From: Dendrobates tinctorius
Lineage: Eukaryota
DNA length: 64,000 bases
NCBI RefSeq assembly: GCF_039654945.1
Contig: NW_027361722.1
Coordinates: forward strand, 17,298,001 to 17,362,000
Direction of reading: 5' to 3'
The translations under genes were made by a program, and so were the position numbers. The notes beneath the pieces are model-generated. The model was not told the DNA's origin. It saw only the letters and a program-made list of their open reading frames with translations, and searched no databases. Positions within the stretch are counted from its first letter, which is position 1; every line of letters starts with the position of its first letter. Positions 9,862 to 43,304 of this stretch are shown here, in pieces.

Positions 9862-10249
9862 GAAAATTTTACTGAAATCAGCTGTCTAAAATGCTCCAAA
9901 ATCCAATACAGAAATAGGATTTTACGCAAAAGTGATTATAAAAAAAACAAATAAAATAGGATAAAAAGGCCACAGCCGCCCACAGTTGGTTTCCATCTTC
10001 CGATGACAGAATCTGCTACAAGAAGTGGCACCCAGTAGTCCCAAGATACTGTATAGTCCTCCCCACGGTTATAGGGCCAGGCCTCAAGACTAGCAGGAAC
10101 CATGACCTCTCTGGGGCCATTTATGGTGGAATGCAAACAGTCATACACATGAACCAGGAAGGGGGGGAGCACTTGTTTTGGAATCAACATTGTTAAGTTT
10201 CATTAAGATGGCCATTAAAAAGTCAATCTGTGGAGGACCACATTCGGGA

Positions 10250-13200
10250 CTACACCTCCGACTGGACCAACTCGTAGTCAGGAAGATGGCGCTCTTCAGT
10301 CTCGTCATTGCATAGACTTGGTGGATGATGAATTCCAATGAGGAGGTCATAAATAAATGACCCAATGACCCCACCAACCATGGGGCCCACTACTGGTACC
10401 CACCACCAGTGACCTCCAGCCCTAGAAGACAAAAATAATCAGAAATAGGTTAACAACTCAGATTTGTGAGATGTCCTACCACCCAAAATAACCATACAAG
10501 TTACTAGTCAACAAGCTTATCGGAAGACTCCTTAATGTCTTAAGTCACGGAAAAGTTCTATATAATAACTGAAGTTGACGTCTTCCCAGTATTCACGTCA
10601 CTGTAACAAGACTGTGCAGAAACTGAAAGAGCAGGGGATGCTGGAAGATTTCAGCTCTCGAGTTTACAAAATTATGAACAGACAATTACACGGCACAAGA
10701 CATATGCTTATTAATATTATTTAGTACACGTAAAAGAGGATGAGAAAAAAAAAACAAAAACACACAAACAAAAGGAAAACCATACACAAGTTACCTGAAG
10801 ACTTCAGCACCCCAACCAGCAAGCGCCGTGAAGAAGCGAGGGGCTAGGTCCCGGGCTGGATTTATGGGGTATCCACAGTTGAATCCCATAGAAAGACCAA
10901 CAAGCAAGACTATCAAACCAATCACAAACGGTTGAAGACCCCGGGGGGCTGCATTATTTTTCTCATCAATAATGGCCAGGAGGCAAATCATTAAGGCAGC
11001 AGTGGCGATCACCTGGGTTGGGAAAAAAAAAAAAAAAAAAAAAGTATATTTATTCAGGGGCAGACCTATTCCTGGAGGGGTGGAGCCTAATAGTCTAATG
11101 ATCTACATTCTTTATTTATATTTTTTTCAGCCTAGTGTGAGCTTCCAGTCTTATGGTTCTTCTGTCAAGAAGAGCCTCCAGTAAATACTGTGTAGCCAGG
11201 ATAATATTTTTCCCCACCTTGTAGCGTTGAACGCCAAATGGGTCTTGAGCTACCAATTCATTAGAGATGTCTTGTATAGAACCCCAAACCACAAAATTAT
11301 ACTTTGCCTGCACCAGTCTGGAAAGGACTTGAGGGAGGAGCATTGTAAGGAGGGGATTGGGCTCCTCCCCATGTCCTTTCCAGATTGATGCAGACAAAAC
11401 AGAGGTGTTTTATATGTAATTTAAAAGCCATGTATTTTTCCCCCATGGAGACTTTACCTGATCTGAGAATCCATTAGCCACGCTCAGATGTTCTGATGGA
11501 TAAGACGCAAATATCCCAGCAGTCGCTTGTGGCCCGTACACCGTCCAGTTCCCGCCACTGTACACATGAAGGGCATCTAGAGGTCACCAATAAAAGATAA
11601 GCGATTGGCAGTTGTACAAAATTACAGGACAGTTATAAAGTCCATTTTCAGATACCTTATTATAACATGGGGAGTTAAAGGGGGCACCTCAATAGTAATA
11701 TATCAGCAAGGGGAGGTGGTCCCTCTAAAGGATACAGAACATGAAGACCATGGAATTTGATACCATGTAAAGCTACAGATCACCTGTAGGAGGCGCTGCA
11801 TAGAAAGAAACAATTGCAGAATACAGAATCACAATAGTGAGATAAAGTTATTTTTACAAATTAGGAGAAAAGTAGAACCTAAAGGATTACACAGGATTTA
11901 AGGCAGCCACCTTCTGACAGCTCAAGATGTCAACTGTTGTAAAATCCAGCGATCGGGTGCACAATCCTCCCCTGAAGCTGCTCTCCACACAAGTATTACA
12001 CTGTACCCAGGTTAGCAGGCTGCTCATAATGGACCGACCAGTCAAAAAGCATCTCATGGTTTGATCTCTTACCAAAATACAAGACAAATACCAGGCTTGC
12101 GCCAAAAAAGGATCCGAGGAATTGTGCCACAAAGTAGACGATCATGAGCTCACAGGTCATCTTCTTTAGGAGGTACATGGAGAAAGACACAGCTGGATTG
12201 AGATGCGCGCCTGGAGTGTAACGGGAAATGGGTTATCAGAAACCTAAAAACACCAGCAGAATAGTGAGTGCAGCTCTGGGGGTATAATACAGGATGTAAC
12301 TCAGGATCAGTAACGTAATGTGTGTACACAGTGACTGCACCAGCAGAATAGTGAGTGCAGCTCTGGAGTATAATACAGGATGTAACTCAGGATCAGTAAT
12401 GTATGTACACAGTGACTGCACCAGCAGAATAGTGAGTGCAGCTCTGGGGAATAATACAGGATGTAACTCAGGATCAGTAATGTAATGTATGTACACAGTG
12501 ACTGCACCAGCAGAATAGTGAGTGCAGCTCTGGGGTATAATACAGGATGTAACTCGGGATCAGTAATGTATGTACACAGTGACTGCACCAGCAGAATAGT
12601 GAGTGCAGCTCTGGGGTATAATACAGGATGTAACTCGGGATCAGTAATGTATGTACACAGTGACTGCACCAGCAGAATAGTGAGTGCAGCTCTGGGGAAT
12701 AATACAGGATGTAACTCAGGATCAGTAATGTAATGTATGTACACAGTGACTCCACCAGCAGAATAGTGAGTGCAGCTCTGGGGTATAATACAGGAGGTAA
12801 CTCAGGATCAGTAATGTAATGTATATACACAGTGACTGCACCAGCAGAATAGTGAGTGCAGCTCTGGGGGTATAATACAGGAGGTAACTCAGGATCAGTA
12901 ATGTAATGTATGTACACAGTGACTGCACCAGCAGAATAGTGAGTGCAGCTCTGGGGTATAATACAGGAGGTAACTCAGGATCAGTAATGTATGTGCACAG
13001 TGACTGCACCAGTAGAATAGTGAGTGCAGCTCCGGGGTATAATACAGGATGTAACTCAGGATCAGTAATGTAAATACACAGTGACTGCACCAGCAGAATA
13101 GTGAGTACAGCTGACCTTTTTATATAAATCACATCATCAATACATGCAAAGTTTTAATACACTTCTTGTAACCTGCTCACCTCATCAACATAGAATGTTA

Positions 13201-13706
13201 AAAAAAAAAAAAAAAAAAAAAATCCATAGTTACCCACTCACCTGAGATTCCAGCACAGACATACGAGCCAGCAGTGACCGCAAAACCAAACGCCATATTG
13301 ACGCTTAGAAACTGAGCTTTGGCAAAACCACTCAGCTCCATCTGAGCCACAGAACCGCAGCCAAATAACTAAGGGAAGAAAGTGAACTGTGAAAGACAGT
13401 TCTTGCATGACACTTGCACTGATAACCACTTCCATATACATACTGCAGGGCCACGCACTTTTATATAAAAGTGATCGTATATGGTACAGAATCTCTTAAC
13501 CACTTCAAAGAGGTTCTGCAGCAGTTGGGATGTATTACATGAAATAACAGTGTTACAGAACATGACAGCACTTTACTTACAATTAATATGGCAGTCCCTA
13601 AAAACTCCGCCAGCCCGCAGCGCACATAGGGATTAGTGGTCCTAAACATACGTTTGAGCGTCTCCAGTGATCGCTCATGCAGACTCATCTCATCCATATC
13701 CGCCAT
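10250..13706 (-). CDS. Aquaglyceroporin copy 1 (AQP3/7/9/10 class, probably AQP13/AQPxlo-like), 6 exons, 299 aa
   Basis: Exons 13581-13706, 13242-13368, 12073-12210, 11458-11576, 10795-11012, 10250-10421; all GT-AG; sum 900 nt and open. Internal exon sizes 127/138/119/218 are typical of aquaglyceroporins. Motifs [29 protein letters not shown]. Confidence 0.96.
12251..13112. repeat. 81-87 bp tandem minisatellite (~10.5 copies) in intron 2 of AQP copy 1
   Basis: Unit acagtgactgcaccagcagaatagtgagtgcagctctggggtataatacaggatgtaactcaggatcagtaatgtatgtac. Confidence 0.97.
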
Positions 13707-13830
13707 GTCCCTGACCCTCTGACTGCAGCTGCTTTTCCTTCACAGCTGCACTTTCTATCCTCCTGATATAGGACCCAATCTACTGACCTGGGCTCTGATC
13801 GAAGTGCAGCTGATTCTGAGCTCCATTAAC

Positions 13831-13837
13831 TATTTAA
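13831..13837 (-). promoter_or_regulatory. TATA-like element upstream of AQP copy 1
   Basis: TTAAATA on minus about 125 nt upstream of the ATG, at the edge of the block shared with copy 2. Confidence 0.35.
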
Positions 13838-14435
13838 CTCTCACTACAATGACAGCGCCATTTTCTGGAGTGAGGCGTTTTGTTCTTTAAGATATTGGGG
13901 CTTGGACAATATAAGAAAAAAAAGATTTGTGGAGTCAAATTTGCCAAATTAATTCTCTTAATAAATATTCCATATTTTGGATCGTCCTAAAACCTGAAAA
14001 TGAAATCCAACAGGCGTAGATTTGTACTAAAAGTTGCTCCATTTTCTGGCCTAAGGCTTAATAAGTGTATCTTACGCCCCCTTCACACGTCCGTTTTTGT
14101 GGTCCGTGTGTGGCTCATTTTTTAAATACCGCACACCCGTTCTTTTCTATGCCTGGTGCACACATGTCAGTTTTTTCTTTTTTGACACAGACAGTGTGTC
14201 CATGTGAAAAACCCGCAGTCCTTTTTTTTTTCATCAGCACAGAGGAAATGCTTTCCGCACACGTGAACACTGATCACATCTATGTAACATCTGCGTGTCA
14301 CGTCCCGGAATTAAATGCTCTGGCGGCGGCCAGGAAAATAAAAATCTGAGCTTTTCCTAGGTGCTGACTACAACTCTCATCATTCTCAGGTCTCCCTGCA
14401 GTCAGCGAGACTAGGCAACGCTGAGAACAGTTTTA

Positions 14436-14652
14436 GGCCACGGTCAGACTTGCAAGTGCAATGAGAGAAACTCGCGCTAGTCTCTCGCATCAATACCCGG
14501 CACTGCCGCCGCCACTCAGACAGGAATGTGCAGCTGCATGTATTTCTATGCAGCCGCACACTCCGGTCCCGAGTGCCGGCAGCAGTGCCAGGTGTTGAAG
14601 CGAGAAACTTGCGTGAGTTTCTCGCATCACACTCGCAAGTCTGACCCCGGCC
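14436..14652. mobile_element. Palindromic MITE, PIF/Harbinger-like
   Basis: TIRs GGCCACGGTCAGACTTGC / GCAAGTCTGACCCCGGCC, preceded by TTA; related to 47437-47652. Confidence 0.7.
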
Positions 14653-15830
14653 TGGAAATATCAGGAGGCTTTCTATTTTCCCTGTCGCGCATTAAATAAA
14701 ATTTTTTAAAAAAACGTTGTGGTGTCCCTCCTATATTTTAAAACCAGCACAGATAAAGCAGACAGCTGAGAGCTGGGACAGTTCAGGGCTAATGGCCCGT
14801 CCCGAGCCAAAAAATAGAGGCCCGCAGCCACCACAGAATTGGCGCATCACATTAGATATGCCAATTCTGGCTCTTTACCCATCTCATCCTGATTGCCCTG
14901 GTGTAAGAGGGTGGCCGGACGATATTCGTAGTCGAGGACACTGAGGCTCTGGTGTCCTGACCTCCTCCCACAGAAAAACCATCAGCTTCTACCGGTGTAC
15001 CTGTTCGAGATGCTCGTCCACCATCAGGGATTTCACTGTAGTGTGACCCAATTCCTGCACACTTGGTTCCAGCACTCAGGGTTGAAATAACGGACACAGA
15101 TACCGGTTCTGATGCCAAATCAACGATTTTACTTTCTTCTTCAACGGTCCAGGACACATCAGTTATATTACAGTTCACACAGCCTTCCTCCTGCACTTTC
15201 CCTTGCTTGCTTTCTACATCCTTACGCACATTCCAGGGTAGTAGCGCCCTTGGCGGTACCGCAGCATCACTCCTGTGTGACCTCAACCCCCTACATTCTC
15301 CCTTTCCTAAAATTTGGTCGTCCCGACCAAACCAACTACAATATTTACACAATACATAGAAAACATCCTAAAGAATTTACACTGTACATAACTTAGAAAG
15401 TGCAATCTTGGCTCAGAGTCCTCCAGGTTAAGTCCATCAATATATACATTATATATATATATATATATACAGTATAACATATTTTTGCAATAATACGGCC
15501 CGTTTTTTCCAGATGCCATCAGTCTTTCTGAAGTAGAGCTCCCCCTTTCCTTAAGGAGAGCAGGTTTCCTCATCAGCAAGAAAAACATATATTTATTTTT
15601 GCACATGGATCATTAGCATTATGGGGACACGAAACAGTCCTTCCGCAATATTTGTCAGGCGCAACAAGTGCAACTTTTTTTCTTAAAGCGACAGTACTCA
15701 GCGGCGGACATCCCGGTCCGACGCATCCGGTGCCACCGGAAACGGAACCTGATTCCGTTGCCGGTGGCTACTGTTGTACGACTGTGCAGCTGCAGAATCA
15801 TAAGACATCAAAGGGTGAGATGCACCGCGG

Positions 15831-16697
15831 TGTTAGGAACGGCGGAACGCACTGAATAAAAATAAATAATAAAGTGCGTTCGCCGCTTGGGGTCCACCGT
15901 GCAGTAGGTGTTTCACCGCTGCTAGATAATGGCAGATGCACAATATGGCGGTATATCGCACACGGGTTGAACATCACCCAAATGCGGTAAGCAATCTCTG
16001 TTTGCTCACAGAGATGTCAGCAGAGGTAAACACAAAAGGCTGAGCCTGTTAGTGTCACAGGTCTCAGGTAAATGCACACACGGTATCTGGTCACAGGACA
16101 GAACCCAAAACACAGGAGCTGCATCCGTCTAGACCTACCGTGCGTGCGGCGTCGCTACTGCGGATGCTAAAGTGGGCTGCAACTGCAGCGCAGCGTAGAA
16201 CACTGCCGCTAGTCGACAAAGCAAGGAAGCACGTGCAATGTCGGACGCTAGCACTGTGGATGATGTTGTAGCGGCTTGAGGCTTGCCACGCGTTGGCGCT
16301 GACTCTAATCTAAGTCCCTGTCCACATTCGTAATATCAGAGGAAGGGGATCTTAATGAGTCATTCGCAGGTTCATACATCCATCATCATTCACACAGTAG
16401 CGACTATACTAGCGCATGGCCGAACGGTCATGCACGCTTTTTATAGCCGGGACCTTCCGAAAGCTTCCAGATCTCCGAGATGGACCAATGAGATCTGGAG
16501 CAGGACCTGGGCACATGACTCTCGATCTCAAATGGGAGATCGTCTCGTGAGCATGCCCAGTAGGAGAACAGAGGGACTTAGTCCCTGGAGCGATCTGCTG
16601 CAAAGCAATCTCCTCTTTGGTAGATAGACAGCAGGAGACCGCAGAATGTGAGGTTCTGGATTCCTGCAGAGTAGATGCAGAAACCTGACGCCTAACA
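15831..16697 (-). mobile_element. Solo LTR (867 bp)
   Basis: Termini TGTTAGG..CCTAACA, perfect 5-bp TSD CGCGG (15826-15830, 16698-16702), TATAAAAA on minus near 16440. Confidence 0.9.
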
Positions 16698-16770
16698 CGC
16701 GGGGTGTAGAAGATGGTGGTGGGGCAGCCTGCTCCGGCTGTGGAAATAGCCCCATGTAATCCTCACGTAG

Positions 16771-16958
16771 GAGGGTCACCGCGACCGCATAATACCCCAC
16801 GGACAATCTTCCTTAAAAAAGAACACTTCATCGCCCTACTTCAGGGCTCTGCCGAATCTGATGGAGGCCGCGTTTAGGTAGACCTTCGCGTTGGTCCCGT
16901 CTTCCCTGATGAAGCCGTACCCCCGCTCAATGTCCACGTACGCTAACCGACCTCGGTG
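16771..16958 (-). pseudogene. Decayed cold-shock-domain (CSD) coding sequence
   Basis: Manual translation HRGRLAYVDIERGYGFIREDGTNAKVYLNAASIRFGRALK*GDEVFFFKEDCPWG/YYAVAV fits the CSD pattern (RNP1 GYGFI, L.EGD.V.F, A..V); one stop, one frameshift. Confidence 0.65.
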
Positions 16959-17230
16959 CGCCCGCCTGCCAGAGCGCTTCCACCCTGCTGCAGCTCGGCC
17001 CACACCTACTTTTCTCGCTGCTTCTTTTTTTTAGATTATATCTTTCACCCAGGCCGCCTGCCTGGGGGTGGGGAAGGGCACCTCCGGTGTTAGGGAGAAG
17101 TGGGGAGCGCCCAGGCCTGCAGAGGTGGAGGGTACTGCAAAGGCTGTCGGGTAGGAATTGGCGGCTGCACCCCCCTTAGGGATGTGATCTTGGGGTTCTT
17201 CCTTACCTCTGACACCAAGGCTCTTCTCCC

Positions 17231-17532
17231 ATGATTGCTCAGTTTGGCTTAACGGCCAGGTCTAGGAAGACTTCTGGTGGTCCCAAACTTCTTCCATTTA
17301 AGGATTATGGAGGCCAGTGTGCTCTTAAGAACCTTGAGTGCTGCAAAAATTCTTTTGTAACCTTGGCCAGATGTGTACCTTGCCACAATTCTGTCTCTGA
17401 GCTCCTTGGCCAGTTCCTTTGACCTTTGTAACCTTGGCCAGATGTGTGCCTTGCCACAATTCTGTCTCTGATCTCCTTGGCCAGTTCCTTTGACCTCATG
17501 ATTCTCATTCGGTCTGACATGCACTGTGAGAG
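17231..17532 (-). mobile_element. Tc1-like transposase N-terminal fragment with a 71-bp internal duplication
   Basis: MRSKELAKEIRDRIVARHTSGQGYK..LKVLKSTLASIILKWKKFGTTRSLPRPGR (paired-like HTH and GRP-type linker). Confidence 0.88.
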
Positions 17533-17992
17533 TCAATGGCTCCATCAGTGCATGCACCCGTTTTCTAGGGCTTCAGACGTAAACCCCGACTGAGCCCCTG
17601 ACATGAGGGTAACACAAAATATGAACGTAGCCTAAAAAACACAGAAGGAGTAGGAGTAAATTGGAAGTCTCAAGAGACTCCTGGTTGGATTTCGAGGCAC
17701 TTTTTGAGCATTTTATAAGCATATTTGCCTTAAAAAATGTGAGCATTGGATTCAATTGGCTTAATAATTGTCAAAAATGTGGGAAAATCATCCCCCTAAA
17801 GGCTCGCTCACACTGGCGCATAATACGCAGGAGTGCAATGTGAGAAAACATGGCATTGAACTCTGACCAATGTTATTAAATGAGTCAGTATTTATCTGTG
17901 AGTTTTTTTCAGTTCAGATCAGACTGGGAATTGCTAGAATTGAATCACACTCCCCAATGCAAGTCAAAGGGTGCGACCAAAAAAAAAGCATA

Positions 17993-18920
17993 ATGTGCAC
18001 AAGGAGTGTGGATCATTTCCGAGAGTGCTTCAACAATACAGTTCCAGAGTTGATAAAGTAGTAATGGTGGTTTATCCAACGCGTTTCAAGGTCTTAATGA
18101 CCCCTTCTTCAGTTACGTTATAAAAAGGTTCTCAACCGAAAAAGGGAAGGGAATCAGGGGAGAACCCACAGAGGAAAGCATCCAAGCACCAGATTTGGCC
18201 GCGCTGTAAACGAGCCACCGAAACAGTCAATGAAGCTCGTGAATGGATATGTGTATTTTTTTATATATTTTTGCAGAAATATTTTAACCATTTTTTTGGT
18301 AACAATTTTTATTATACATATATATTCTTTTTTTAATATGAATTACTAATAAAGGCTTACTGCCCTTTTTTTTGGTGGTATTTCAACAAAACCTCTCATT
18401 TTCACTACATATCCATTCACAAGCTTCATTGACTGTTTCGTTGGCTCGTTTACAGCGCGGCCAAATCTGGTGCTTGGATGCTTTCCTCTGTGGGTTCTCC
18501 CCTGATTCCTTTCCCTTTTTTTGGTTGAGAACCTTTTTATAACGTAACTATGGTTTATACAATGAATCATAACATTTCTTTATTTGTATGAATTTTTCAC
18601 CTTGATTTTCTGCAAAAGATATAAATTTACTAGTAAGAAATTGAAACTTTATTTATTTTGTGCCGATAAACAAGCTTTAATTGTCCCTTATTTTGAATCT
18701 TGATACCACGTGGTAAGTGAATGTTTGTCGCCGTTTTTTGAATCATGTAGGTATTTAAGGATTGTAAGTGTACTGTTGCTCTATGTTTTGTGTGGCATCT
18801 CCTGAAGAAGGGGTCATTGAGACCTTGGAACGCGTTAAATAAACCACCATTACTACTTTATCAACTCTGGAACTGTATTGTTGATGCAGGGCGGAAATAA
18901 TCCACACTCCTTGTGCACAT
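17993..18920. mobile_element. Penelope-like inverted-repeat remnant carrying hammerhead motifs
   Basis: Inverted arms 17993-18112/18802-18920 and 18112-18254/18407-18548; CTGAAGA..GAAACGCGTT core in the outer arms. Confidence 0.65.
18071..18112 (-). ncRNA. Minimal hammerhead ribozyme motif (Penelope type)
   Basis: CTGAAGA-A-GGGGTC-ATTAA-GACCTT-GAAA-CGCGTT; stem I looks disrupted. Confidence 0.5.
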
Positions 18921-19138
18921 TGTTTCATAGAGTCGTTAACCATCCCGTGGATCTGCAGCGGCCGATATCTTTGAGCCTTTATCTTGCACCACCAGGTGAG
19001 CAGTTTCTTGGAGATTCCGGTTTCAAATCTGTGGCATAAGACCCTATTTGTGCTTTCTTCCTCTTTCTTTAAACACGCATGTGGCATCCGATTTCTATTC
19101 ACACATCTCAAAGGGATTGATTGATGGATGAATGGACT

Positions 19139-19287
19139 GGGAGCAGCAGCCAATGCCGGTTCTCACGCTGCGCTCTGCGAGAGCCCGGCTGCTTTGATGC
19201 AGGGTTACATCAGTAAGGTTACCGTAGCTTACAGCTGCTGGGTCCTCACAGAGCGCAGCGTGAGAACCGGCATTGGCTGCTGCTCCT
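19139..19287. repeat. Hairpin/inverted repeat with ~42-bp arms inside a non-autonomous DNA element
   Basis: ggagcagcagccaatgccggttctcacgctgcgctctg and its reverse complement. Confidence 0.85.
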
Positions 19288-22021
19288 ATATATGGAGCTT
19301 CGTTCTCTGAACGGGGCTCCATACACTGGATGTCGTAGGATCTCCATTTTTTGGATTACGGCGGACCAGTGTAGATTATTTCCTTATTGTAATAAATGAG
19401 CAAAAGAGAGAAATTGTCGGAAAGTGATTTTTACAAATAAAGGACTTTTCTGTGTGTTTGCTAACCTTGTAGTCAAAAGAATTAAACAAAGGGGGGGTTT
19501 GACAGGCACGTCTCCACTACTAACCCATGGGCTTGTTGTTAGCCACAGCTACTGACCTCAACCCCACAAACCCATTACCCCAATTGCCAGCTCCCCAGGG
19601 CAACTGGGAAGAGCCGAAGCTAAGCAACAGAATTGATGCATCTAATTGGGGCTAGTGTTCTTAGGCTGTTCTTATAATGTAAGCCCACAGCTGTCTGCTT
19701 AGCCTTTGCTAGTTATTAAAAATAGGAGGGACCCCACATCATTTTTTTGGGGGGGGTCCGCCTTTTTAATAACCAGTAAAGGCTAAGCAGACAGCTGTGA
19801 GCTGATATTAATAAACTGGAAAGCTTCATAGTTATTGGGCACTTCCCAGCATAATAAGACAAGCTCACAGCTGTTTGCTTTCCCTTGGCTGATTATTAAA
19901 AATAGGGGAGGACCCCATACCATATATTAGCTAAATACATGTACAGTACGGCACTAATTATGTATCTTGTGGATATCTTTCTATGTATCTATATATAAGG
20001 TTGCTTTATTAGTTTGAAAAATAGCTTTAAATGACATAGAAAATTACAGTATGTAAAAGATGATGTGTAAAACCCATTCCATGTCGTACGTATGCTAGGT
20101 GAGAACATCGCACACTCACATGATACAAGTTGAATCATACAGATTCCACTCATCCAACTTTTCAGAAGCAATTTCGGAGCTATTTTTTAGATGCTAATTC
20201 TGGATAAAAAAAAAAGTTTTCTGCAGCCGTTTCCATTTGACCAACTCGTCATTTTTGACCATGTATACAAAAATGTAGTGTGAACATATCCTTAAAAAAT
20301 GCAAAAAAAAACAAGAAAAAAAAAAAAATCTATAGTAAAGTATAGAGCAACTTCGCAGTCGAAAACGCCTGGTAAAACACAATTAGATTTGCACCGACTC
20401 CAGTGGTCACACTTAAGCACTTTTACTCCATTCACACAAGGAACTTTGGGACCTCCTTCCGTGGGCCTCACCAGACGAATCACCTCACCCAGTGATCATA
20501 CATTTTTTATCTATTCTGTGGCTATGTAATATATTTTGCTCATGGGACAGCCTTTAAGTTGAGATCATCTTGCTGGTTCTTCTCCGAGAAGAGACTGTTT
20601 AGGGTGCAGTCAGATGGCCATATAAATCGGACCGAGCGAGATTGCAACGCATTGATCAGACTGACCGGCGGATCTGCCTACCTGAGCGTGACAGCTACAC
20701 AGAAATATATGAAGCGGTCTTGCGAGCAGCCGGCCAGTCCAAGCATTTTGATCTGATCTCGGTCCGATTTATACGGGAAGTCTTTGCCTTGATAACCTGT
20801 GGTTGAAGGCTTGACGGTGACATTCTGTTTTGGGATTGTGGTTTGCGTTCTTGTCTGACTCTTATAATACAGGCATGGGAAGAAGCCATTTATTACGCAT
20901 TTTTTCTTGAATCCAATTTTTCCTTTCCTAAATAGCAGAATTTCGTTTTCAGTGCTCGCAAAAAATGTTTTACATGTGGTGTTGCCAGGCATGCAATTAC
21001 CTAAACTAATAAGACGTAAAAATTTATAAAAAAATAAAAATATATATATAGTTAATTGTAGAATTAGTGTTTTTCACACGCCACAATCATCCCCATCTCC
21101 GAAAGAAGTCCACTATAAAGACTATATAACCCCCAAAATGGTATCACAAGAACCAAGCCCTCGTGTTCATCCATCAGCAGAAAAAAGTCAAAAGTTACAG
21201 ATTCAAGAAAATGGCGACAAAAGCAAAACTATGCAAGTGTGGCATTGCTGTAATTGTGCTGAACTTTAGGATCTTCTTTCCAAGTCATTTTTATCGTTTA
21301 ATGGACACTAAAAAAAAAAAAAAAAAAAAAAAAATTGTAAAATAGCCTTTTATTTTTTTGCAGTTTTTCCCCCACTTGGAATTTTTTACTTCTGTCTTCC
21401 ACTACATCAAATGGTAAAATGAATGTTGTGATTTAAAAGTACAGCTCGCCCAGAAAAAAAAAAAATGAAAAAGTGAAAAAAAAAAAAAAAGTGAATAAAA
21501 AGTAAAGACTCCTGGAAAATGAGAAGGAGAAATAAAAAAAAATGGCTGCAGCTGGCCTAGGGGGTTTAAAAAACAAAAGTCTGATTTTTATGGCTGGTTC
21601 TGTTGCTACTCCTGGTCGTCTACCATCTTAATTTCTTTTTTTCTTCTGACATTGTTCCCTGATTGCAGACTACATTTCCCATGATGTCTCTTGCTTTGCA
21701 GAGGAGGCGATGTGTAGCCACACCAATTTGCCATTTCTTTCTACCCTTGCTGGTGGAGTTGTCAGAGGGACATTCAGCAGATGCATGAGACTACAAGGCG
21801 TAGACCCAAATCCAGAACTGTCCGCAGTATCCAGGACAGTTGGGACTAAAGTTGACTGGATCGATTTGTACTAGAACGGTCGAGGGGGGGGGTGGACACT
21901 TCAGCACAATCTGTACTCACTGTGCTGACAGCTGCTTCATCCCTGGTGCATCCCACGTTCCTTCTGGAATTCAAGAGAACTGGAGGCAGAGCCCAGCATA
22001 ACTTCAAACAGGAAAGATTTA

Positions 22022-22375
22022 GGCTGAGTGCAGACGGAGTTTTGAGCCCTGCGGATTTTTCCGTGCAGAATGGAAGAAAACCGCAGGTCAAATGACCTGC
22101 ATTTTTCCTGCGGATTTCTTCCATTTTTCACGCGGTTTTCGTGCGGTTTTCCATTGCGGTTTTCCCCCTGCGGATTTGGTAACAGGGGAGATAGAAAACC
22201 GCACAAAAGGAGTAACATGCTGCGGATTTTGTACCGCAGGAAAACCGCGCGGAAAAATCCGCAGCGTCTGCACAGCGTTTTTTTTCATTTTAAAGGTACT
22301 GTACATCACAATGCGGATATGCAACGTTTCTGCGCGGTAAAATCCGCTGCAAATCTGCATCGTGTGCACATGGCC
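22022..22375. mobile_element. PIF/Harbinger-type MITE
   Basis: TTA TSDs, TIRs GGCTGAGTGCAGACG / CGTGTGCACATGGCC, many internal tgcgg/ccgca motifs. Confidence 0.8.
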
Positions 22376-23785
22376 TTATTTTCTTCAGGACATAGCACAT
22401 CCAACACATCATTACCACACTTGACATGGTACCAGCAATACATCTCAGCTTTCCCTAGCTTCTTCAGCTACACCAGAATGGACCACAAAGTTATAGCGGG
22501 ATGAGGAGCCCGGTGAAAATGGCACTTCGACCTCTTTCACTGGAACCGACTTCAGTCCAGACACGGAAATACTCGTCTACTAGGTTGTCCACCCCCTTTT
22601 GGTTATCCTGCCCGTACACTCGCTTGTGGCCCACTCGACTACTTCGTCAGCACCCACACTCATCCGCTGGCTTTTTCACTGCTGCAGATACCATATACTT
22701 CACTTCTGCTCTGCACAAGTCTCCCACATCTGCTATGGATGGCGAGGGACACCACTTCACACAGTGGGTTAGCTACACAGCTCAGGAACAGAGATGTTTG
22801 AGCACCACACGGGGTCCACCCCACTGACTATAAACCAGGAAATCTCACTAGTTCCCACTAACACTCCTCTAATTAACTCTAAAGTGTCCTACAAATGTGC
22901 TCTATTATGAATGTGCCCAGTGCCCCCATCTTGTGTCCTTTTTATTAACTGCACTGCCCCAACTCGTAGATCACAATATGGCAATAAACACTTATATACA
23001 GCTTACACATAATGCACAGATATGTAAATACGGGACATTCAACTATGGCAATCATGTACAAACAAAACAGGAATATCAACATTTACAGGGGTAGGCCCTA
23101 ACCTTCTTACAAATTCAGGAGACACCAGTTCATGGCAGCTGGATGGGAGATTTACCTTCTGGCAGGACACAATATTATCTGTTCACAGATCACATTGCAG
23201 GAGCCGGAAGATAAGTGTCACAGTCAGACCATTCTTCTAAGTGCCAGGTAAAACTTACCCGATGTCCCGCTCAATTCTAGTTAGGACATACGGATTTATT
23301 TTTGGTCATTCATTCATAATTTTAGCAGCCAGAACTTTGGCATGTTACACAAGCTTTACTATATGACAGCTTGTCCTTGCATCCGCAGGGCAGTGTTCCC
23401 ACGTTACGTAAAATCATGCATTTCCTGAACCAAAGTATGCAATATCAATTCTCTCTGGTTATTGCATTTTTCCTGCTTAATTGATACATTTCTGGTGCAG
23501 ATTTGAAGCAGTTTTTTTATGCTCTTGGCATTTTTCTTTTTATAGTGTAGAAAAGCTTTGAATTTCTCTTTATGGGTGGAAGAAACAAAGTAGTTTAAGG
23601 AAAAAAAAAGTTTCGCCTCTGAAATACAGATACATAGAAATGCACTGGTATATACAGACTTATCTCTATGTACCAGTATAATCTGCCTCTGATTTCAGAT
23701 CCTGCACACTCCAGCTTCAGAAATGCTGTAATATTTATTGGTGGCTCGCAGCTTCTTACTGGAATGATGAAGGTTGTCGGTTTAA

Positions 23786-24736
23786 CCCCTTAACAACCAG
23801 AGGTAGTTTTGGATTTTCATTTTTCACTCCTTCGTCCCAGAGCAATTACTTGTTTTTTGCAGGATGAATTGTAATTTTGAACACCATTGAATTTAGCATT
23901 TCTTCTACTGGAAGATAGGATAAAATTCCAAGTGTGGTGAAATTGCAAAATAAGTGCAACTCCACAATTTTTTTGTTTTCTTTTTTAATTTACTAGGTTC
24001 GCTAAATGCTAAAACTGACCTGCCACTATGAATTCGTAATGACCTGGAGAATCATAGACACCAAACATGTCTAGGTTGTTTATTTTTTTTAATCCAAAGG
24101 GGGAAAAAAAAAAAAAAAAAAAAGACCCAATTCAGTACAAAAAAAAAAAATAAAAAAATAAAATAGTGTCATTTTCCAATACCCACAGTGTCTTTAGTTT
24201 TTGTGATCTCAGGTTGGGTGAGGGCTTATTTTTTGCACACCGAGCTGATGTTTAATGATACCTTGTTGGTGCAAATATGTTCTTTTGATCACCCGTTATT
24301 GCAATGTTGCGGCAACAAAAATTATATATATTTATATTAGTTCTGTCGTTATTACTTTCTTAATTAGCAATTGGGTTAATCTTTCTATATTGATTTGGCA
24401 ATTCTTAATGTAACAATACTAAATATGTAGGTGTTTTGTTTTTTTTATTTTGATTGGGGTGGAAACAGGTGTTTTGAACTTTATTTTTTCACTTTTGGCA
24501 TGTTTTAATAGTCTCCATAGGAGATGAGAAACTGCCATAAAGCATTTACCTCTGCTACATACAGGCGATGAATGATCAGATCGTCTGTATGTAGCAGAAT
24601 TGGTACAAGTGCCGACCACCAGGCGGTATTCATAGCAATCTGACATGTGCCAGAAAAGAGGTGGCCTCAGCTCTGGAACCCACATCAAAAGGGTATCCGA
24701 CGTCCGCATACTATTATGGCCCATGTTGGAAAGGGC
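23786..24736 (+). mobile_element. Non-autonomous TTAA-CCCC (piggyBac-like) element
   Basis: TTAA|CCCCTT left end, GGAAAGGG right end, collinear with 45521-46756. Confidence 0.75.
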
Positions 24737-24920
24737 CTAAATGAAAGTGTATATTTTATATTTAACTGAATTAGCATGTTCAGAGCAGAGCTGCTGGCCC
24801 CACCCCAGAGGAGCTACATTCAATGCAATCAGAGAAAAACATCGCACAGAGGGAGAATGAAGTTGGACACAGCCATATTAGATCCAGGTCAGGAGAACAT
24901 TCGCACTTGAATATTTTACC

Positions 24921-25139
24921 CATTTATATAGCGCCATTAATTCCACAGCGCTTTACAGACAATCACCACTGTCCCCGATGGGGGCTCACAATCTAAGTTC
25001 CCCATCGGTATGTCTTTGCGTGGGTTTCCTCCCACATTCCAAACATAGGGAGAACATACAAACTCCTTGCAGATGTTGTTGTCCTTGGTGGGATTTGAAC
25101 CCAGTGCTGCAAAGTAACTGTGCTAACCACTGAGCCACC
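24921..25139 (-). mobile_element. tRNA-derived SINE with an L2-type 3' tail
   Basis: On minus: A box GGTGGCTCAGTGG, B box GGTTCAAATCC; tail similar to the 3' end of the L2 at 38933. Confidence 0.85.
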
Positions 25140-25353
25140 CTATATGTGCGTAGTCAAAGTCTACCTGCACAGTGCAGCTGCGCTCAAAGCAACCACAAGT
25201 GCCCCATGCACCTTCACACGGGCTTCCCCCTTGCCACCCCACAGCCATCGCCACCCTCCTCTTCCTTCGTCAGGAGATTAAATATTGGACAAACCTGGCA
25301 TCACCACTTCAGGGCCCCATATAGCACAAAACTTCTTTTTAGGGGGTCTCATC

Positions 25354-25359
25354 TTTATT
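25354..25359 (-). terminator. Polyadenylation signal of aquaglyceroporin copy 2
   Basis: AATAAA on minus in the same conserved context as copy 1. Confidence 0.7.
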
Positions 25360-25821
25360 GAAAATTTTACAAATTAGCTGTATACAAAGTTCCAGTGACG
25401 ATCCTGAAATACGATATTACAAAGCGTTAAAAACAGCGATTATAAAACCATTTAAAAGCACAATTAAAAAACAAAAAAGAAAGAAAGGCAGCAGCTGCTG
25501 ACTGCAAACAGATTCCAGCCCTCATGTTTCAGAGGCTGTTGAAAATGAAAGATGATCTGATCCAAGAAGTGGCACCCAGTAAGTCCTGAGATACTATGTA
25601 GTCTTCCCCACCATTTTAGGGCCAGGCCACGAGACTGATAAGAACCATGACCTTGCTGGGGTGAGTAGATGTAGGGGCAGCCATTTATGGTGGAATGTGA
25701 ACAGTCAAACATCTGAATCCGGAGAAGAATCACATTTTGGGGTTAATGTAAAATTTCAAAGGCGTCCATTAAAATCTTCAGTCTTCAGATGACACAGGCC
25801 CCCCCCCAACCACGTAGGGCC

Positions 25822-28800
25822 CTAAGCCTCCATCTGGACCAACTCGTACTCCGGAGGATGACGCTCTCCATTTTCTTCATGGTTCTCCTTGCGTTGGCTC
25901 GGTGCATGATGTATCCCAATGAGCAGGTCATAGACAAACGTCCCAATGACGCCACCCATCATGGGACCCACTACAGGCACCCACCACCAGTGACCTCCAG
26001 CCCTAGAACACAGATATTCTATCAGAACATACCAACTTGCAAAGGTTAACAACCCACTAGTTTGTGAAATGTCAACCACCAGAAGTACCCAGTCTAGTTA
26101 TTGGAAACAGTCAGCAAGTTTCTCTTAAGACCCCCTTAACTGAAGTTCCAAAATTCAAGTGGAAATTAGGTTTTAGGTTAAAGATGCCTCTTCCCTGTAG
26201 TCTAGTCACCATAGCAATCCTTCATGCAGATGCTGAACTAGCAGGGGATGCTGGAAGATTTCAGCTCTGAAGTAAGCAGAATTCTACCCAATGGACAGCC
26301 CATTATACAACACATCTGCTTTCACAATATTTAGTGCTTTTTAACAAATGTAGAATTACGAAGCCGTTACCTGAAGACTTCCATGCCCCAGCCAGCAAAC
26401 GCAGTAAAGATCCGAGGCGCCAGGTCCCGGGCTGGATTAATGGGGTATCCACAGTTGAATCCCATAGAAAGGCCAACAAGCAGGACTATCAGACCAATCA
26501 CAAATGGCTGAAGACCACGAGGGGCGGCATTGTTTTTTTCGTCAATAATGGCAAGGAGGCAAACCATCAAGGCAGCGGTGGCGATGGCCTTGGGCAAAAA
26601 AAAGAAAAAAAAAGTTTCTTTATCTCAAATGGAAAAAAAAACACCTACACAGTATGTGTACATTTAGGGGTGGTCCTATTCCTGGAGGGGGCTGAGCATG
26701 ACAAATCAATAGGACCATTGAAGTTCTTCAGCCCGATTTCACACTATGGTTTGGACCAGCCATGATGGTTGCACAGTCCTTTTTTTTTTCCTGCAGCAGT
26801 ATTGAGCAATACCTTGGTCATGAGCTACTGGTATTTCATAGAGCCCCTGACAAGACTGTACTTCCATCAGTCTGGAAAGGAATTAAGGGAGGAGCATTGT
26901 AAGAAGGGGCCTTTCAGCCAATCGGCTTCCCGATAGTGTTATTCTGTGACATGATTGGCTGAGAGCAGCAGACTGACCTCACAATGCTCCTCCCCATGTC
27001 CTTTCCAGTTTGATGCAGACAAAACAGAAGTACTTAGCTTGTAAATAAAGGAATACCGTGATTTGTTTTCCCACACAAACACTTCACCTGATCTGCGAGT
27101 CCATTTATTGCACTCAGATGTTCTGACGGGTAGGAAGCAAATATCCCAGCAGTCGCCTGCGGCCCGTGCACAGTAAAGTTGCCGCCACTGTACACATAGA
27201 AGGCATCTAGGGAGGTATTCAAGAAGAGACAAGAGTTGGGAATCTAAACACCAACTTAGTCTTAACTGAGGAACTCAATGATTCATCGAAACATCGTATA
27301 ATTGGTTGAATTCTTACCAAAATACAAAGCAAATACCAGACATGCACCAATGAACGCGCCGAGGAATTGAGCCAGCCAGTAGACGAGCATCAGCTTCCAA
27401 GTGGTCTTCTTTAAGAGAAACAGGGAGAAAGACACAGCAGGATTGAGGTGGGCGCCTGGAGTAGTAAAGGAAGTTACCATAAGGCCATGTTCACACAGAA
27501 TTTTTGTACTAGAGAAAAAAAACCCACACGTTCACAGCATTTTATTACAGCTTTTTGGCTGCTGGATACAGGTTTCTTTGTCTATTGCACATGTTTAAGT
27601 TGTATTTGCAGCTTTTTTGGGGGAAATAAACTTTCTATGTTTGGAGGAATTTTGAAAGATTTTATATGCTGCAGATTTCAAAGTCAAAACAAAGAAAAAA
27701 AAAAAAAAAGAAAAAAAAAAAAAGCACATTAATGAGATTTTTGAAATTGCAGCTTTTGCATGTACGATCAAGAGTAGACTATTTTGCATAAAAAGGCTGC
27801 ATGTGAACGTCACACGTACACAGTGACTGCACCAGCAGAATAGTGAGTGCAGCTCTGGAGTATAATACAGGATGTAACTCAGGATCAGTAATGTAGTGTA
27901 TGTACACAGTGACTGCACCAGCAGAATAGTGAGTGCAGCTCTGGGGTATAATACAGGATGTAACGCAGGATCAGTAATGTAATGTATGTACACAGTGATT
28001 GCACCAGCAGAATAGTGAGTGCAGCTCTGGGGTATAATACAGGATGTAACTCAGGATCAGTAATGTAATGTATGTACACAGGGACTACACCAGCAGAATA
28101 GTGAGTGCAGCTCTGGGGTATAATACTGGACGTAACTCAGGATCAGTAATGTATGTACACAGTGAGTGAACCTGAGCTTTTTATATGAATCAGATCAATG
28201 TGTAGAATTTTAATACACAGTTCTTATAACCGCTCACCTGAGACTCCAGCACAGACATAGGCGCCGGCAGTGACCGCAAAACCAAACGCCATATTGACAC
28301 TTAGAAACTGAGCTTTGGCAAAACCACTCAGCTCCATCTGAGCCACAGAACCGCAGCCAAATAGCTAAAGGAAGAAAAAAAAAATATATATATATTATAA
28401 TGGACTTCATAGTAATTACTATAATGTAAAAGTGCAACCGCAGGGCGAATACCCAATAAACAAGATGCACCCAGTCCAGTACAATACATCAGTGCCACCG
28501 CATAGTCACAGGACATGGAGGAGTTAATACCACATCAACATGATCAGTTTAGGATTCCATTCTCCCAAGGCGGTAATACAAGAACACTAGTCTGTAGTAG
28601 AGGGAGCCCCTTCTTCCCTATCTGAAAGAGGTTCAGCAGCAGCTGTGATACAATAGGGAAGATCAGTGTTCCAAAACACGACAACAGATTACTTACAATT
28701 AATATAACGGTCCCCAAAAACTCCGCCAGCCCGCGGCGCACATAGGGATTAGCCGTCTTAAGCATTCGTCTGACCTTCTCCAGGCATTGCGCATGGACAT

Positions 28801-28831
28801 CCATCACGACTGTCTCATTCATGTCCACCAT
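25822..28831 (-). CDS. Aquaglyceroporin copy 2 (tandem paralog, probably AQP13/AQPxlo-like), 6 exons, 305 aa
   Basis: Exons 28697-28831, 28238-28364, 27318-27455, 27088-27206, 26371-26588, 25822-26002; GT-AG; sum 918 nt and open; both NPA boxes and NPARD present. Confidence 0.96.
27483..27813. mobile_element. Harbinger-type MITE in intron 2 of AQP copy 2
   Basis: TAA|GGCCATGTTCACAC left end, ATGTGAACGT right end; absent from copy 1. Confidence 0.6.
27817..28167. repeat. Same 81-87 bp minisatellite (~4 copies) in intron 2 of AQP copy 2
   Basis: Same unit as 12251-13112. Confidence 0.95.
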
Positions 28832-28981
28832 GATCCTGACCCTCTGATTGTAGCTGGTCTGCCAGCACAGCTGCACTTTATGGAGAGGACTTGATCTAAG
28901 TGCAGCTGATTCTGAACTTCATTAACTCTTTCATTGCCAGGCAAGGTAATTGTGTTAAAATTTGCACCATTGTAAGGCGTA

Positions 28982-42912: not shown

Positions 42913-43229
42913 AGCCCCCATACACATTAGACTAATCAACAGGTTTGGCCAACAGCCGTGGACACCAACTGACTGCCAGGGTCACCAGGCGACTGATGTT
43001 GACGAGAGATGTCAATGGCGCATGTCTGATTTTATGCTGCCAATCACATTGTTCTCCCGGAGAAAAGCTGCCGACTGATGTGTCAGTTGGTGGCTTTCTC
43101 ATAAAGAACACAGGAGCACCCAGCCGAGTGAGCGCTCCTGTGTATGGATGAGGAGGACAAGATGGCAGTGGCCAAACAATTGGCCAAAGCATCGTTCAGC
43201 CAAAATCCATGTAATGTGTGTGGCCTGCC
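42913..43229. mobile_element. MITE with TAA TSD
   Basis: AGCCCCCATACACATTA..TAATGTGTGTGGCCTGCC; related copy at ~47889-48208. Confidence 0.65.
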
Positions 43230-43304
43230 TAAAAACAGAAACTCATAGATTTTAAATGTGTAGTAGCATAATGACGCGCTCTCCAGAACTGAATCTCCAA
43301 GTGT

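What the first reader, a model, noticed from the sequence alone, without database searches (positions are those of the whole stretch)
10250..28831. Tandem pair of intact, diverging aquaglyceroporins beside gja8
Seen: two complete six-exon genes with alignable introns and UTRs, so the duplication is not ancient. Both NPA boxes and the predicted ar/R residues (F, G, Y, R) are the same in the two copies. Substitutions cluster in the N-terminus, loop B/TM3 ([17 protein letters not shown] vs [17 protein letters not shown]), loop C and the C-tail. Established: NPARD marks glycerol/urea channels, and amphibians have an extra aquaglyceroporin class (AQP13/AQPxlo). Inference: a lineage-specific duplication keeping pore selectivity while regulation or localisation diverges, possibly relevant to egg, skin or osmotic physiology.
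Basis: partly seen in the sequence, partly recalled or inferred. Interest (0 to 1): 0.72.

Follow-up and report, generated by a model that had tools for sequence, protein, structure and literature searches.

The report
Poison-frog AQP13 aquaglyceroporin tandem genes
The window holds two of three tandem copies of AQP13, the amphibian "fifth" glycerol/water channel; the array arose in the ancestor of poison frogs, is transcribed and conserved, and is already annotated under the misleading name "aquaporin-3-like".

Summary
Two intact six-exon aquaglyceroporin genes lie head to tail on the minus strand: gene A at 10250-13706 (299 aa) and gene B at 25822-28831 (305 aa). All ten introns are GT-AG. 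A gja8 (connexin 50) ORF lies 22.7 kb upstream.

The exon translations match RefSeq proteins XP_073433282 and XP_073433283 ("aquaporin-3-like", Dendrobates tinctorius). A third copy, C (XP_073433281), lies outside the window.

Phylogeny and synteny place all three in AQP13, the class of Xenopus AQPxlo (NP_001082310), and not in AQP3, 7, 9 or 10. Xenopus laevis has the order gja8, aqp13, GTPase, gpr89.

The array is shared by Ranitomeya and Anomaloglossus, and at least two copies by Phyllobates. It therefore predates the Dendrobatidae/Aromobatidae split. About 25 other amphibians show one copy; Eleutherodactylus coqui expanded independently.

A versus B gives dS 0.51, dN 0.10 and omega 0.20. 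The NPA boxes and the F/G/Y/R filter are invariant. Changes sit in the N-terminus, TM3, loop C/TM4 and the C-tail.

Spliced transcripts of A, B and C occur in the same runs. The A contigs lack 23 nt of exon 5, which shifts the frame.

This is a new member of a known kind, of moderate interest.

The parts
10250..13706 (-). Gene A (AQP13 paralogue A; RefSeq XP_073433282, 299 aa). CDS exons: 13706-13581, 13368-13242, 12210-12073, 11576-11458, 11012-10795, 10421-10250.
   Evidence: ORFs and GT-AG splice sites. All six exon translations are found at the expected offsets in P0179. The CDS span of 3457 nt equals the called gene in the assembly. Pfam MIP E 7e-50. Zero-mismatch spliced contigs lie on exons 3, 4 and 6 and the 3'UTR.
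25822..28831 (-). Gene B (AQP13 paralogue B; RefSeq XP_073433283, 305 aa). CDS exons: 28831-28697, 28364-28238, 27455-27318, 27206-27088, 26588-26371, 26002-25822.
   Evidence: All six exon translations are found in P0178. Pfam MIP E 3e-48. B-specific letters in spliced contigs match the window exactly at 27319, 26373, 25880 and 25881.
12251..13112 (.). Intron 2 minisatellite of gene A: 81-86 nt unit, 10.3 copies.
   Evidence: TRF and repeat family D1. The unit occurs in the window only in the two intron 2 arrays.
27816..28157 (.). Intron 2 minisatellite of gene B: the same 86 nt unit, 4.0 copies, 92-95% identical to the gene A array.
13231..13381 (-). Exon 2 of gene A plus flanks, unusually similar to gene B at 28227-28377. 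Identity is 94-95%, against 80-88% in the other exons. This may be a gene-conversion tract or may reflect extra constraint.
   Evidence: Repeat D5. Exon 2 dS is 0.14 against about 0.6-0.7 in exons 3-6 (0.36 in exon 1). Fisher p = 0.004 on synonymous sites.
10980..11002 (-). 23 nt near the 5' end of gene A exon 5 that are absent from gene A transcript contigs in three runs of one study. The loss shifts the frame: VIAT then GHY then stop.
   Evidence: Joint 10979 to 11456 with the 8 letters TGGCGATC between, in X19, X20 and X21. Record-length accounting and A-specific letters are; translation of the shortened form is.
13796..13835 (-). 40-nt block about 90-130 nt upstream of gene A's ATG, 90% identical to 28892-28931 upstream of gene B. 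It is a candidate shared promoter element.
   Evidence: BLAST of the A region against the B region. Function not tested.
51524..53299 (-). gja8 (connexin 50) single-exon ORF, 591 aa, same strand, upstream of gene B.
   Evidence: Pfam Connexin and Connexin50. X. laevis has the same order, gja8 then aqp13.

Best explanation
The two genes are paralogues A and B of a three-gene, head-to-tail array of AQP13. AQP13 is the aquaglyceroporin class first cloned as AQPxlo from Xenopus oocytes. In Dendrobates tinctorius the array sits between gja8 and the downstream GTPase/gpr89 genes, in the sense order gja8, B, A, C.

The array arose by tandem duplication of the single ancestral amphibian AQP13 on the stem of the poison-frog superfamily Dendrobatoidea. 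All three copies have been kept since.

Each copy most likely still forms an AQP3-like tetrameric channel for water and small neutral solutes such as glycerol and urea, because the fold, both NPA boxes, NPARD and the F/G/Y/R constriction are unchanged. This step is inferred.

The copies differ in the cytoplasmic N-terminus and C-tail and in TM3, loop C and TM4. The most likely reason for retention is partitioning of regulation, trafficking or expression, or dosage, and not a new pore chemistry. This step is also inferred.

Local sequence exchange, or added constraint, keeps exon 2 and the intron 2 satellite of A and B more alike than the rest.
For: Shown:
- Intact six-exon models with GT-AG introns.
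- Exon-for-exon identity with RefSeq proteins P0179 and P0178 of D. tinctorius.
- An AQP13 clade containing X. laevis NP_001082310/AAM81580 (support 99/89 with lungfish, 100/97 for amphibians), separate from AQP3, 9, 10 and 7. Those two accessions are the ones Finn et al. 2014 list as AQP13 (cluster).
- Synteny in X. laevis: gja8, aqp13, MMR_HSR1 GTPase, gpr89.
- A dendrobatoid clade (99/97) with a C group (100/99) and A and B groups that each hold Ranitomeya sequences. An Anomaloglossus sequence falls in the A group.
- Consecutive RefSeq accessions in the order C, A, B in three species.
- In Anomaloglossus, A is followed 9.3 kb downstream by C on the same strand.
- About 25 other amphibian species appear with one gene each in the word search; only E. 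coqui has more.
- Summed per-exon counts give dS 0.51, dN 0.10, omega 0.20.
- No A/B rate asymmetry: 19 against 17 unique changes.
- Invariant F63, G203, Y212, R218 and both NPA boxes.
- AF2 model with pLDDT 85, matching AQP3 cryo-EM structures at TM 0.96, rmsd 1.5 A.
- Spliced transcript contigs of A, B and C in the same runs.
Against: - No transport assay and no tissue information, because run identities are coded.
- Conserved ar/R residues do not guarantee equal solute selectivity. The determinants among aquaglyceroporins are poorly understood (PMC10769510).
- Gene A transcript contigs in one study carry a 23-nt frameshifting gap. This sits badly with A being needed in every animal.
- The grouping of A with B has weak support (84/58) and the Anomaloglossus and Phyllobates B-like sequences are unresolved.
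- Copy C was only seen as a protein record and in contigs. Its DNA could not be fetched.
Confidence: 0.8

Rival explanations
1. The copies are redundant and gene A is on its way to being lost. The array persists by chance or by dosage, and in at least some D. tinctorius animals A is already a null allele.
For: Gene A transcript contigs in three runs of one study lack 23 nt of exon 5 and would terminate after about 176 residues. In run X20 no intact A contig seems to cover the place. All three paralogues are co-transcribed in the same runs, which allows redundancy.
Against: - Omega is 0.20 between A and B, with no excess of changes on the A side.
- A-type orthologues are intact in Ranitomeya variabilis, R. 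imitator and Anomaloglossus.
- The reference assembly has the intact, conserved exon 5.
- Canonical joints next to the masked poly-T run were dropped by the tool, so intact A transcripts may have gone unlisted.
- These are contigs, not raw reads.
Confidence: 0.12
2. The copies have been neofunctionalised in permeability. Changes in TM3, loop C and TM4 alter which solutes pass (urea, boric acid, peroxide, ammonia) although the ar/R filter is unchanged, as happened between the tandem aqp10.1 and aqp10.2 genes of ray-finned fishes.
For: Nine of the 65 A/B differences lie in TM3 and ten in loop C/TM4. Fish tandem aqp10 paralogues differ in urea and boric acid permeability, and the basis of selectivity among aquaglyceroporins is not well understood (PMC10769510).
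Against: There are no changes in TM5 or around the second NPA box (A residues 180-229) or in residues 40-76 (TM1 and the start of TM2). Y212, which tunes urea permeability in AQP3, is conserved. Most replacements are conservative hydrophobic swaps.
Confidence: 0.12
3. The duplication is an assembly artefact: uncollapsed haplotypes or a mis-join.
For: None beyond the general risk in large, repeat-rich frog genomes.
Against: The copies are only about 80% identical in coding DNA, with dS 0.51. Each has its own orthologue in other genera. Distinct A, B and C transcripts exist.
Confidence: 0.01
4. The genes are extra AQP3 copies, as the RefSeq name 'aquaporin-3-like' suggests, or AQP10 copies.
For: Exon 5 scores best against AQP3 and then AQP10 among solved structures. 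The fold is closest to AQP3.
Against: They are only about 50% identical to AQP3. Frogs have a separate true AQP3, which sits in its own 100/100 clade. The genes group with X. laevis AQPxlo/AQP13 and share its gja8 synteny. The PDB holds no AQP13, so the PDB ranking cannot decide.
Confidence: 0.01

Closest known systems
Xenopus laevis AQPxlo / AQP13 (NP_001082310, AAM81580)
   Same: They share a phylogenetic clade and the position downstream of gja8 on the same strand. They are 74-75% identical, with the same NPA/NPARD and F/G/Y/R residues, the same 'LLKK' stretch after the first NPA box, and the same C-terminal Y-E-L-V-Q motif.
   Different: Xenopus and about 25 other amphibians have one gene. 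Poison frogs have three in tandem. Yilmaz et al. 2020 reported only single AQP13 orthologues in Amphibia (PMC7408487).
Human/mammalian AQP3
   Same: Same fold (TM 0.96, rmsd 1.5 A). Same ar/R quartet F63/G203/Y212/R218 and same NPA boxes. Six-exon gene.
   Different: Only about 50% identical. Different clade and different locus. Frogs also have a true AQP3.
Tandem aqp10.1 / aqp10.2 of ray-finned fishes (PMC10769510)
   Same: These are tandem duplicates of an aquaglyceroporin retained for a long time. They serve as a model for what retained tandem copies can become.
   Different: They belong to a different subfamily and lineage. In fish, functional divergence in urea and boric acid permeability was measured. 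Here nothing has been measured.
Eleutherodactylus coqui AQP13 copies (P0212, P0214, P0216)
   Same: An independent multiplication of AQP13 in another hyloid frog that lays eggs on land. The copies form their own 100/99 clade.
   Different: Separate origin. The tandem arrangement is only inferred, because two of the proteins are listed on a contig of the same length, 79.5 kb. No second copy lies within 10 kb.

Membership tests
MIP / aquaglyceroporin (GLP) family | Pfam MIP domain across the protein | tested here: met
   Exons 3 and 5 alone hit PF00230. Full records P0179 and P0178 score E 7e-50 and 3e-48.
MIP / aquaglyceroporin (GLP) family | Two NPA boxes, the second followed by R-D (NPARD), and a wide ar/R filter (F, G, Y, R as in AQP3) | tested here: met
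   N83-P-A, N215-P-A-R218-D219, F63, G203 and Y212 (AQP3 numbering) are invariant in the alignment of A, B, C, other AQP13s and AQP3.
MIP / aquaglyceroporin (GLP) family | Six-helix, two-half-helix aquaporin fold | tested here: met
   The AF2 model of gene A's protein has pLDDT 85.4 and pTM 0.85. Foldseek gives AQP3 at TM 0.96, AQP10 at 0.96, AQP7 at 0.95 and GlpF at 0.90.
MIP / aquaglyceroporin (GLP) family | Conducts glycerol, urea and water | not testable with these tools
   Needs oocyte or liposome assays.
AQP13 subfamily | Groups with X. laevis AQPxlo (NP_001082310/AAM81580), apart from AQP3, 7, 9 and 10 | tested here: met
   IQ-TREE with 60 proteins gives an amphibian clade at 100/97 that includes P0192. 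P0192 and P0307 carry the accessions that Finn et al. 2014 list as AQP13.
AQP13 subfamily | Conserved locus | tested here: met
   The window has gja8 upstream on the same strand. The X. laevis locus reads Connexin50 gene, aqp13, MMR_HSR1 GTPase, GPHR/gpr89. Nanorana has the same GTPase downstream. Platypus synteny was not checked.
AQP3 orthologues (RefSeq name 'aquaporin-3-like') | Falls inside the gnathostome AQP3 clade | tested here: not met
   The AQP3 clade (100/100) holds the frogs' own AQP3 and excludes these genes. They are 50-51% identical to AQP3.
AQP10 orthologues | Groups with AQP10 | tested here: not met
   The AQP10 rows (Numida, Sphaeramia) lie outside the AQP13 clade, on long branches.

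The most novel reading that the evidence does not exclude
AQP13, the oocyte aquaglyceroporin, was multiplied independently in two frog lineages that lay eggs on land: Dendrobatoidea, with three conserved tandem copies, and Eleutherodactylus. The array would then be an adaptation of the water, urea and glycerol economy of the egg, embryo or tadpole to terrestrial reproduction, with the copies split between stages or membranes. Copy C has lost the conserved C-terminal Y-x-x-hydrophobic motif. A segregating 23-bp frameshift in copy A would give a natural knockout with which to test this.
Probability: 0.15. Interest if true: 0.65.

Novelty: new member of a known kind. Interest (0 to 1): 0.4.

Why it matters
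AQP13 is the least studied vertebrate aquaglyceroporin. It was lost in therian mammals, birds and reptiles and kept in amphibians and monotremes. The most complete survey reported only single copies in amphibians (PMC7408487).

A three-gene array conserved across poison frogs, plus a separate expansion in the coqui, shows that the subfamily is still evolving. It also gives a natural set of closely related channels with identical filter residues and different termini. These are useful for asking what controls trafficking and solute preference in aquaglyceroporins, and whether terrestrial breeding selects on egg or skin solute channels.

There is also a practical point. The RefSeq name "aquaporin-3-like" hides the true orthology.

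Tried and rejected
1. The exhaustive representative search with exon 5 alone gave no near-identical full-length representative. The best was a lamprey 'aquaporin-3-like' protein at 71%, and many hits were unnamed exon-sized fragments. It did not settle the class.

2. An alignment of all twelve exon rows on a lamprey scaffold misplaced exons 1 and 4. These rows were dropped and the profile was rebuilt from exons 2, 3, 5 and 6.

3. The look-up of encoding contigs returned no DNA for any dendrobatid genome because the files are too large. So there is no codon-level comparison with orthologues, no distance from A to C in D. tinctorius, and no branch-site test.

4. The look-up of sequencing runs gave coded runs, none recorded as RNA. 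That they are RNA was inferred from exon-only depth and GT-AG joints. Tissue is unknown.

5. Global alignments of introns of very unequal length gave inflated identities, for example 98% for intron 3. These were disregarded in favour of BLAST.

6. A word search of earlier findings for aquaporin terms returned nothing.

7. AQP3, AQP10 and assembly-artefact readings were considered and rejected.

8. No second E. coqui copy was found within 10 kb of P0212.
Full report
**What is in the sequence**

Two sets of six ORF pieces lie on the minus strand and are collinear with each other. Reading the minus strand around them gives two complete models with identical exon phases and GT-AG at all ten introns.
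- Gene A: 13706-13581, 13368-13242, 12210-12073, 11576-11458, 11012-10795, 10421-10250 (900 nt, 299 aa).
- Gene B: 28831-28697, 28364-28238, 27455-27318, 27206-27088, 26588-26371, 26002-25822 (918 nt, 305 aa).

The finding's limits, 10250 and 28831, are exactly A's stop codon and B's start codon.

The repeat finder shows the gene bodies as a direct repeat spaced 15.0-15.6 kb apart. BLAST of the two regions aligns:
- all exons
- the start of intron 1
- the intron 2 satellite
- part of intron 4
- intron 5
- about 250 nt of 3'UTR
- about 130 nt upstream of the ATG, including a 40-nt block at 90% identity

Intron 3 and the intergenic DNA do not align.

A 591-aa ORF at 51524-53299 on the same strand is gja8, with Pfam Connexin at E 6e-102 and Connexin50 at E 9e-27.

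**How the spliced models were handled**

Exons were searched one by one by reference. Per-exon counts were summed for dN/dS.

To reach full-length relatives in the word search, I used a profile whose rows were a lamprey protein (P0151) and the separate translations of exons 2, 3, 5 and 6 of both genes, all by reference. That search returned public proteins P0179 (299 aa) and P0178 (305 aa). These contain all six exon translations of gene A and gene B respectively, at the expected offsets. All later full-length work used these records.

The N runs were not touched.

**Identity**

P0179 is XP_073433282 and P0178 is XP_073433283, both named "aquaporin-3-like [Dendrobates tinctorius]", on a 19.6-Mb contig of GCA_039654945.1. 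So the window comes from the dyeing poison frog, and both genes are already RefSeq models.

A third model on the same contig, XP_073433281 (P0190, 299 aa, copy C), is 79-81% identical to A and B. It is not in the window and has no called neighbour within 10 kb.

**Class**

Among solved structures, exon 5 of both copies scores AQP3, then AQP10, then AQP7, then GlpF. The PDB holds no AQP13, so this ranking cannot decide the class.

A maximum-likelihood tree of 60 proteins (LG+C20) places A, B and C in a clade of amphibian proteins (100/97) with a lungfish protein as sister (99/89). That clade follows the species tree: salamanders, Bombina with Discoglossus, pipoids, pelobatoids, neobatrachians. 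It includes X. laevis P0192.

P0192 and its cluster mate carry accessions NP_001082310 and AAM81580. These are the two accessions that Finn et al. 2014 list as AQP13 of the African clawed frog. [quoted passage not shown]

The frogs' own AQP3 sits in a separate 100/100 clade. AQP9, AQP10 and AQP7 are also apart.

Synteny agrees. In X. laevis the gene order is a 594-aa Connexin50 gene, aqp13 on the same strand, an MMR_HSR1 GTPase, then a GPHR/gpr89 gene. Nanorana has the same GTPase downstream.

The genes are therefore AQP13. They are not AQP3 or AQP10.

**Age and spread of the duplication**

In a second tree the 14 dendrobatoid sequences form one clade (99/97).
- The C group (100/99) holds D. 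tinctorius, two Ranitomeya species, Phyllobates and Anomaloglossus.
- The B group (98/92) holds D. tinctorius and two Ranitomeya species. One Phyllobates and one Anomaloglossus sequence lie unresolved next to it.
- The A group (91/90) holds Anomaloglossus, D. tinctorius and two Ranitomeya species.

RefSeq accessions are consecutive in the order C, A, B in D. tinctorius (…281, 282, 283), R. variabilis (…908, 909, 910) and Anomaloglossus (…397, 398, 399). In Anomaloglossus the A-type gene is followed 9.3 kb downstream, on the same strand, by the C-type gene.

The sense order is therefore gja8, B, A, C. The array existed before Aromobatidae and Dendrobatidae split, which from my own knowledge was roughly 40 million years ago.

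A word search with gene A's protein lists about 25 other amphibian species with a single AQP13 (isoforms aside). There is a sharp drop from 65% or higher identity to 57% or lower at the edge of the subfamily. Only Eleutherodactylus coqui has several, and they form their own 100/99 clade.

Yilmaz et al. [quoted passage not shown] I found no paper in the held library on aquaporins of poison frogs.

**Selection and where the copies differ**

Nei-Gojobori counts summed over exons give dS 0.51, dN 0.10 and omega 0.20. Both copies have been under purifying selection.

Relative-rate counts with five outgroups show no asymmetry, for example 19 A-unique against 17 B-unique changes.

Amino-acid identity by exon:

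| Exon | Identical residues |
|---|---|
| 1 | 27/42 |
| 2 | 40/42 |
| 3 | 33/45 |
| 4 | 31/39 |
| 5 | 67/72 |
| 6 | 42/56 |

I mapped the differences on an AlphaFold model of A. The model has pLDDT 85.4 and matches AQP3 cryo-EM structures at TM 0.96 and rmsd 1.5 A. The 65 differing columns fall as follows:

| Region | Differing columns |
|---|---|
| N-terminus | about 21 |
| Half-helix B and the turn after it | 3 |
| TM3 | 9 |
| Loop C | 4 |
| TM4 | 6 |
| Loop E | 3 |
| TM6 | 3 |
| C-tail | 14 |
| A residues 40-76 (TM1 and start of TM2) | 0 |
| A residues 180-229 (TM5 to second NPA box) | 0 |

F63, G203, Y212, R218 (AQP3 numbering), both NPA boxes and D219 are invariant in A, B, C, other AQP13s and AQP3.

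It is not a poison-frog novelty.

**Partial homogenisation**

Exon 2 is 95% identical between A and B, against 80-88% for the other exons. Its synonymous divergence is a third of the rest (pS 0.13 against 0.41, Fisher p = 0.004).

Intron 2 of both genes holds the same 81-86 nt minisatellite, with 10.3 copies in A and 4.0 in B. The arrays are 92-95% alike between genes, and the unit occurs nowhere else in the window.

This fits a gene-conversion or unequal-exchange tract. Added constraint is not excluded, because the exon 2 peptide of B is unchanged from Xenopus to Dendrobates.

**Expression**

Four runs were laid on gene A's exons 3-6 and 3'UTR at 80% likeness. Depth falls on exons and is about zero in introns. 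The joint 11576 to 12073 is intron 3 with GT..AG ends on the minus strand. So the runs hold spliced RNA, although they are not on record as RNA.

- Gene A: zero-mismatch contigs cover the 3'UTR and exon 6 (10000-10367 in X21) and exons 4 and 3 (X20 record 20, X21 record 25).
- Gene B: letters in other contigs match the window exactly at gene B. Forty letters match the end of exon 3 (27319), 13 letters match the end of exon 5 (26373), and the 9-nt insertion in exon 6 matches at 25880. These contigs span the exon 3/4 and exon 5/6 junctions.
- Copy C: a third set of letters encodes LEVF and APNRCKADH, which occur only in copy C.

All three paralogues are therefore transcribed in the same samples of one study. 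Depths of contigs cannot rank them, and tissues are unknown.

**An unexplained point**

In X19, X20 and X21 the gene A contig joins 10979 to exon 4 with only TGGCGATC between. It therefore lacks 10980-11002, which is 23 nt of exon 5.

Three things show this is gene A and not a paralogue:
- the record-length accounting adds up (21 + 82 + 8 + 121 + 141 + 56 = 429)
- the contig carries the reference letter at sites where A differs from its paralogues
- the bin depth in X20 fits the shortened form

The shortened form reads VIATGHY and then stops.

The orthologue-like contig in run X1, from another coded organism, has the full exon 5. Canonical joints that abut the masked poly-T run at 11011-11056 were dropped by the tool, so intact A transcripts may exist unlisted.

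The likeliest reading is a 23-bp deletion allele in the animals of that study. This rests on contigs and needs DNA.

**Comparison with known systems, and verdict**

The fold, filter and gene structure are those of an AQP3-like aquaglyceroporin. Membership of AQP13 is met on phylogeny and locus. Membership of AQP3 or AQP10 was tested and not met.

What is new is copy number. There is a conserved three-gene AQP13 array in Dendrobatoidea and a separate expansion in E. coqui, against the published picture of single copies.

It needs three corrections. The genes form a triplet. The array is old. The claim of regulatory divergence is untested.

Interest is moderate. This is an annotated, ordinary kind of gene-family expansion. 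It offers a plausible but unproven link to terrestrial reproduction and a possible natural knockout.

Noticed in passing
window 10980-11002: Gene A transcript contigs in three runs of one study lack these 23 nt of exon 5, giving a frameshift and an early stop. This may be a deletion allele.
   Followed up: partly
window 12251-13112 and 27816-28157: The same 81-86 nt minisatellite lies in intron 2 of both genes (10.3 and 4 copies). The arrays are 92-95% alike between genes, which is more than the exons are. Exon 2 next to it is 95% identical, with low dS.
   Followed up: partly
outside the window (P0190, XP_073433281; P0306 in Anomaloglossus): Copy C has lost the tyrosine of the C-terminal Y-E-L-V-Q motif. 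That motif is conserved in AQP13 from Xenopus to Bufo and is kept in A and B. It has the form of a Y-x-x-hydrophobic sorting signal, so trafficking may differ.
   Followed up: no
P0211 (Protopterus annectens 'aquaporin-9-like', 304 aa): A lungfish protein is sister to all amphibian AQP13 (99/89) and is 67% identical to gene A. The papers read here describe AQP13 only in amphibians, monotremes and possibly cyclostomes.
   Followed up: no
P0212, P0214, P0216, P0309 (Eleutherodactylus coqui); loci L003, L004: There is an independent multiplication of AQP13 in the coqui, a direct-developing frog. Two of the proteins are listed on a contig of the same length, 79.5 kb. No second copy lies within 10 kb of P0212.
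   Followed up: partly
window 712-4589 (+): Long ORFs of 802 and 546 aa show protease, reverse-transcriptase and integrase-like sequence features of an LTR retrotransposon. They lie downstream of gene A. This was judged from the translation only.
   Followed up: no
window 51720-52250 (within gja8): The connexin 50 C-tail is long (591 aa in total) and holds repeated ERAPSERA-like units. X. laevis gja8 at the syntenic locus is also 594 aa.
   Followed up: no
window 43229-45133 (-): An ORF of 634 aa is made of a short tandem repeat (…HTELTSSLYYWER…). It is probably a satellite read through, not a gene.
   Followed up: no
window 62949-63770 (-): A 273-aa ORF has the look of a Harbinger/PIF-type DDE transposase.
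   Followed up: no
RefSeq naming: All amphibian AQP13 genes found here are named 'aquaporin-3-like', 'aquaporin-9' or even 'pyrimidine nucleobase transmembrane transporter activity'. Orthology is hidden by the names.
   Followed up: yes
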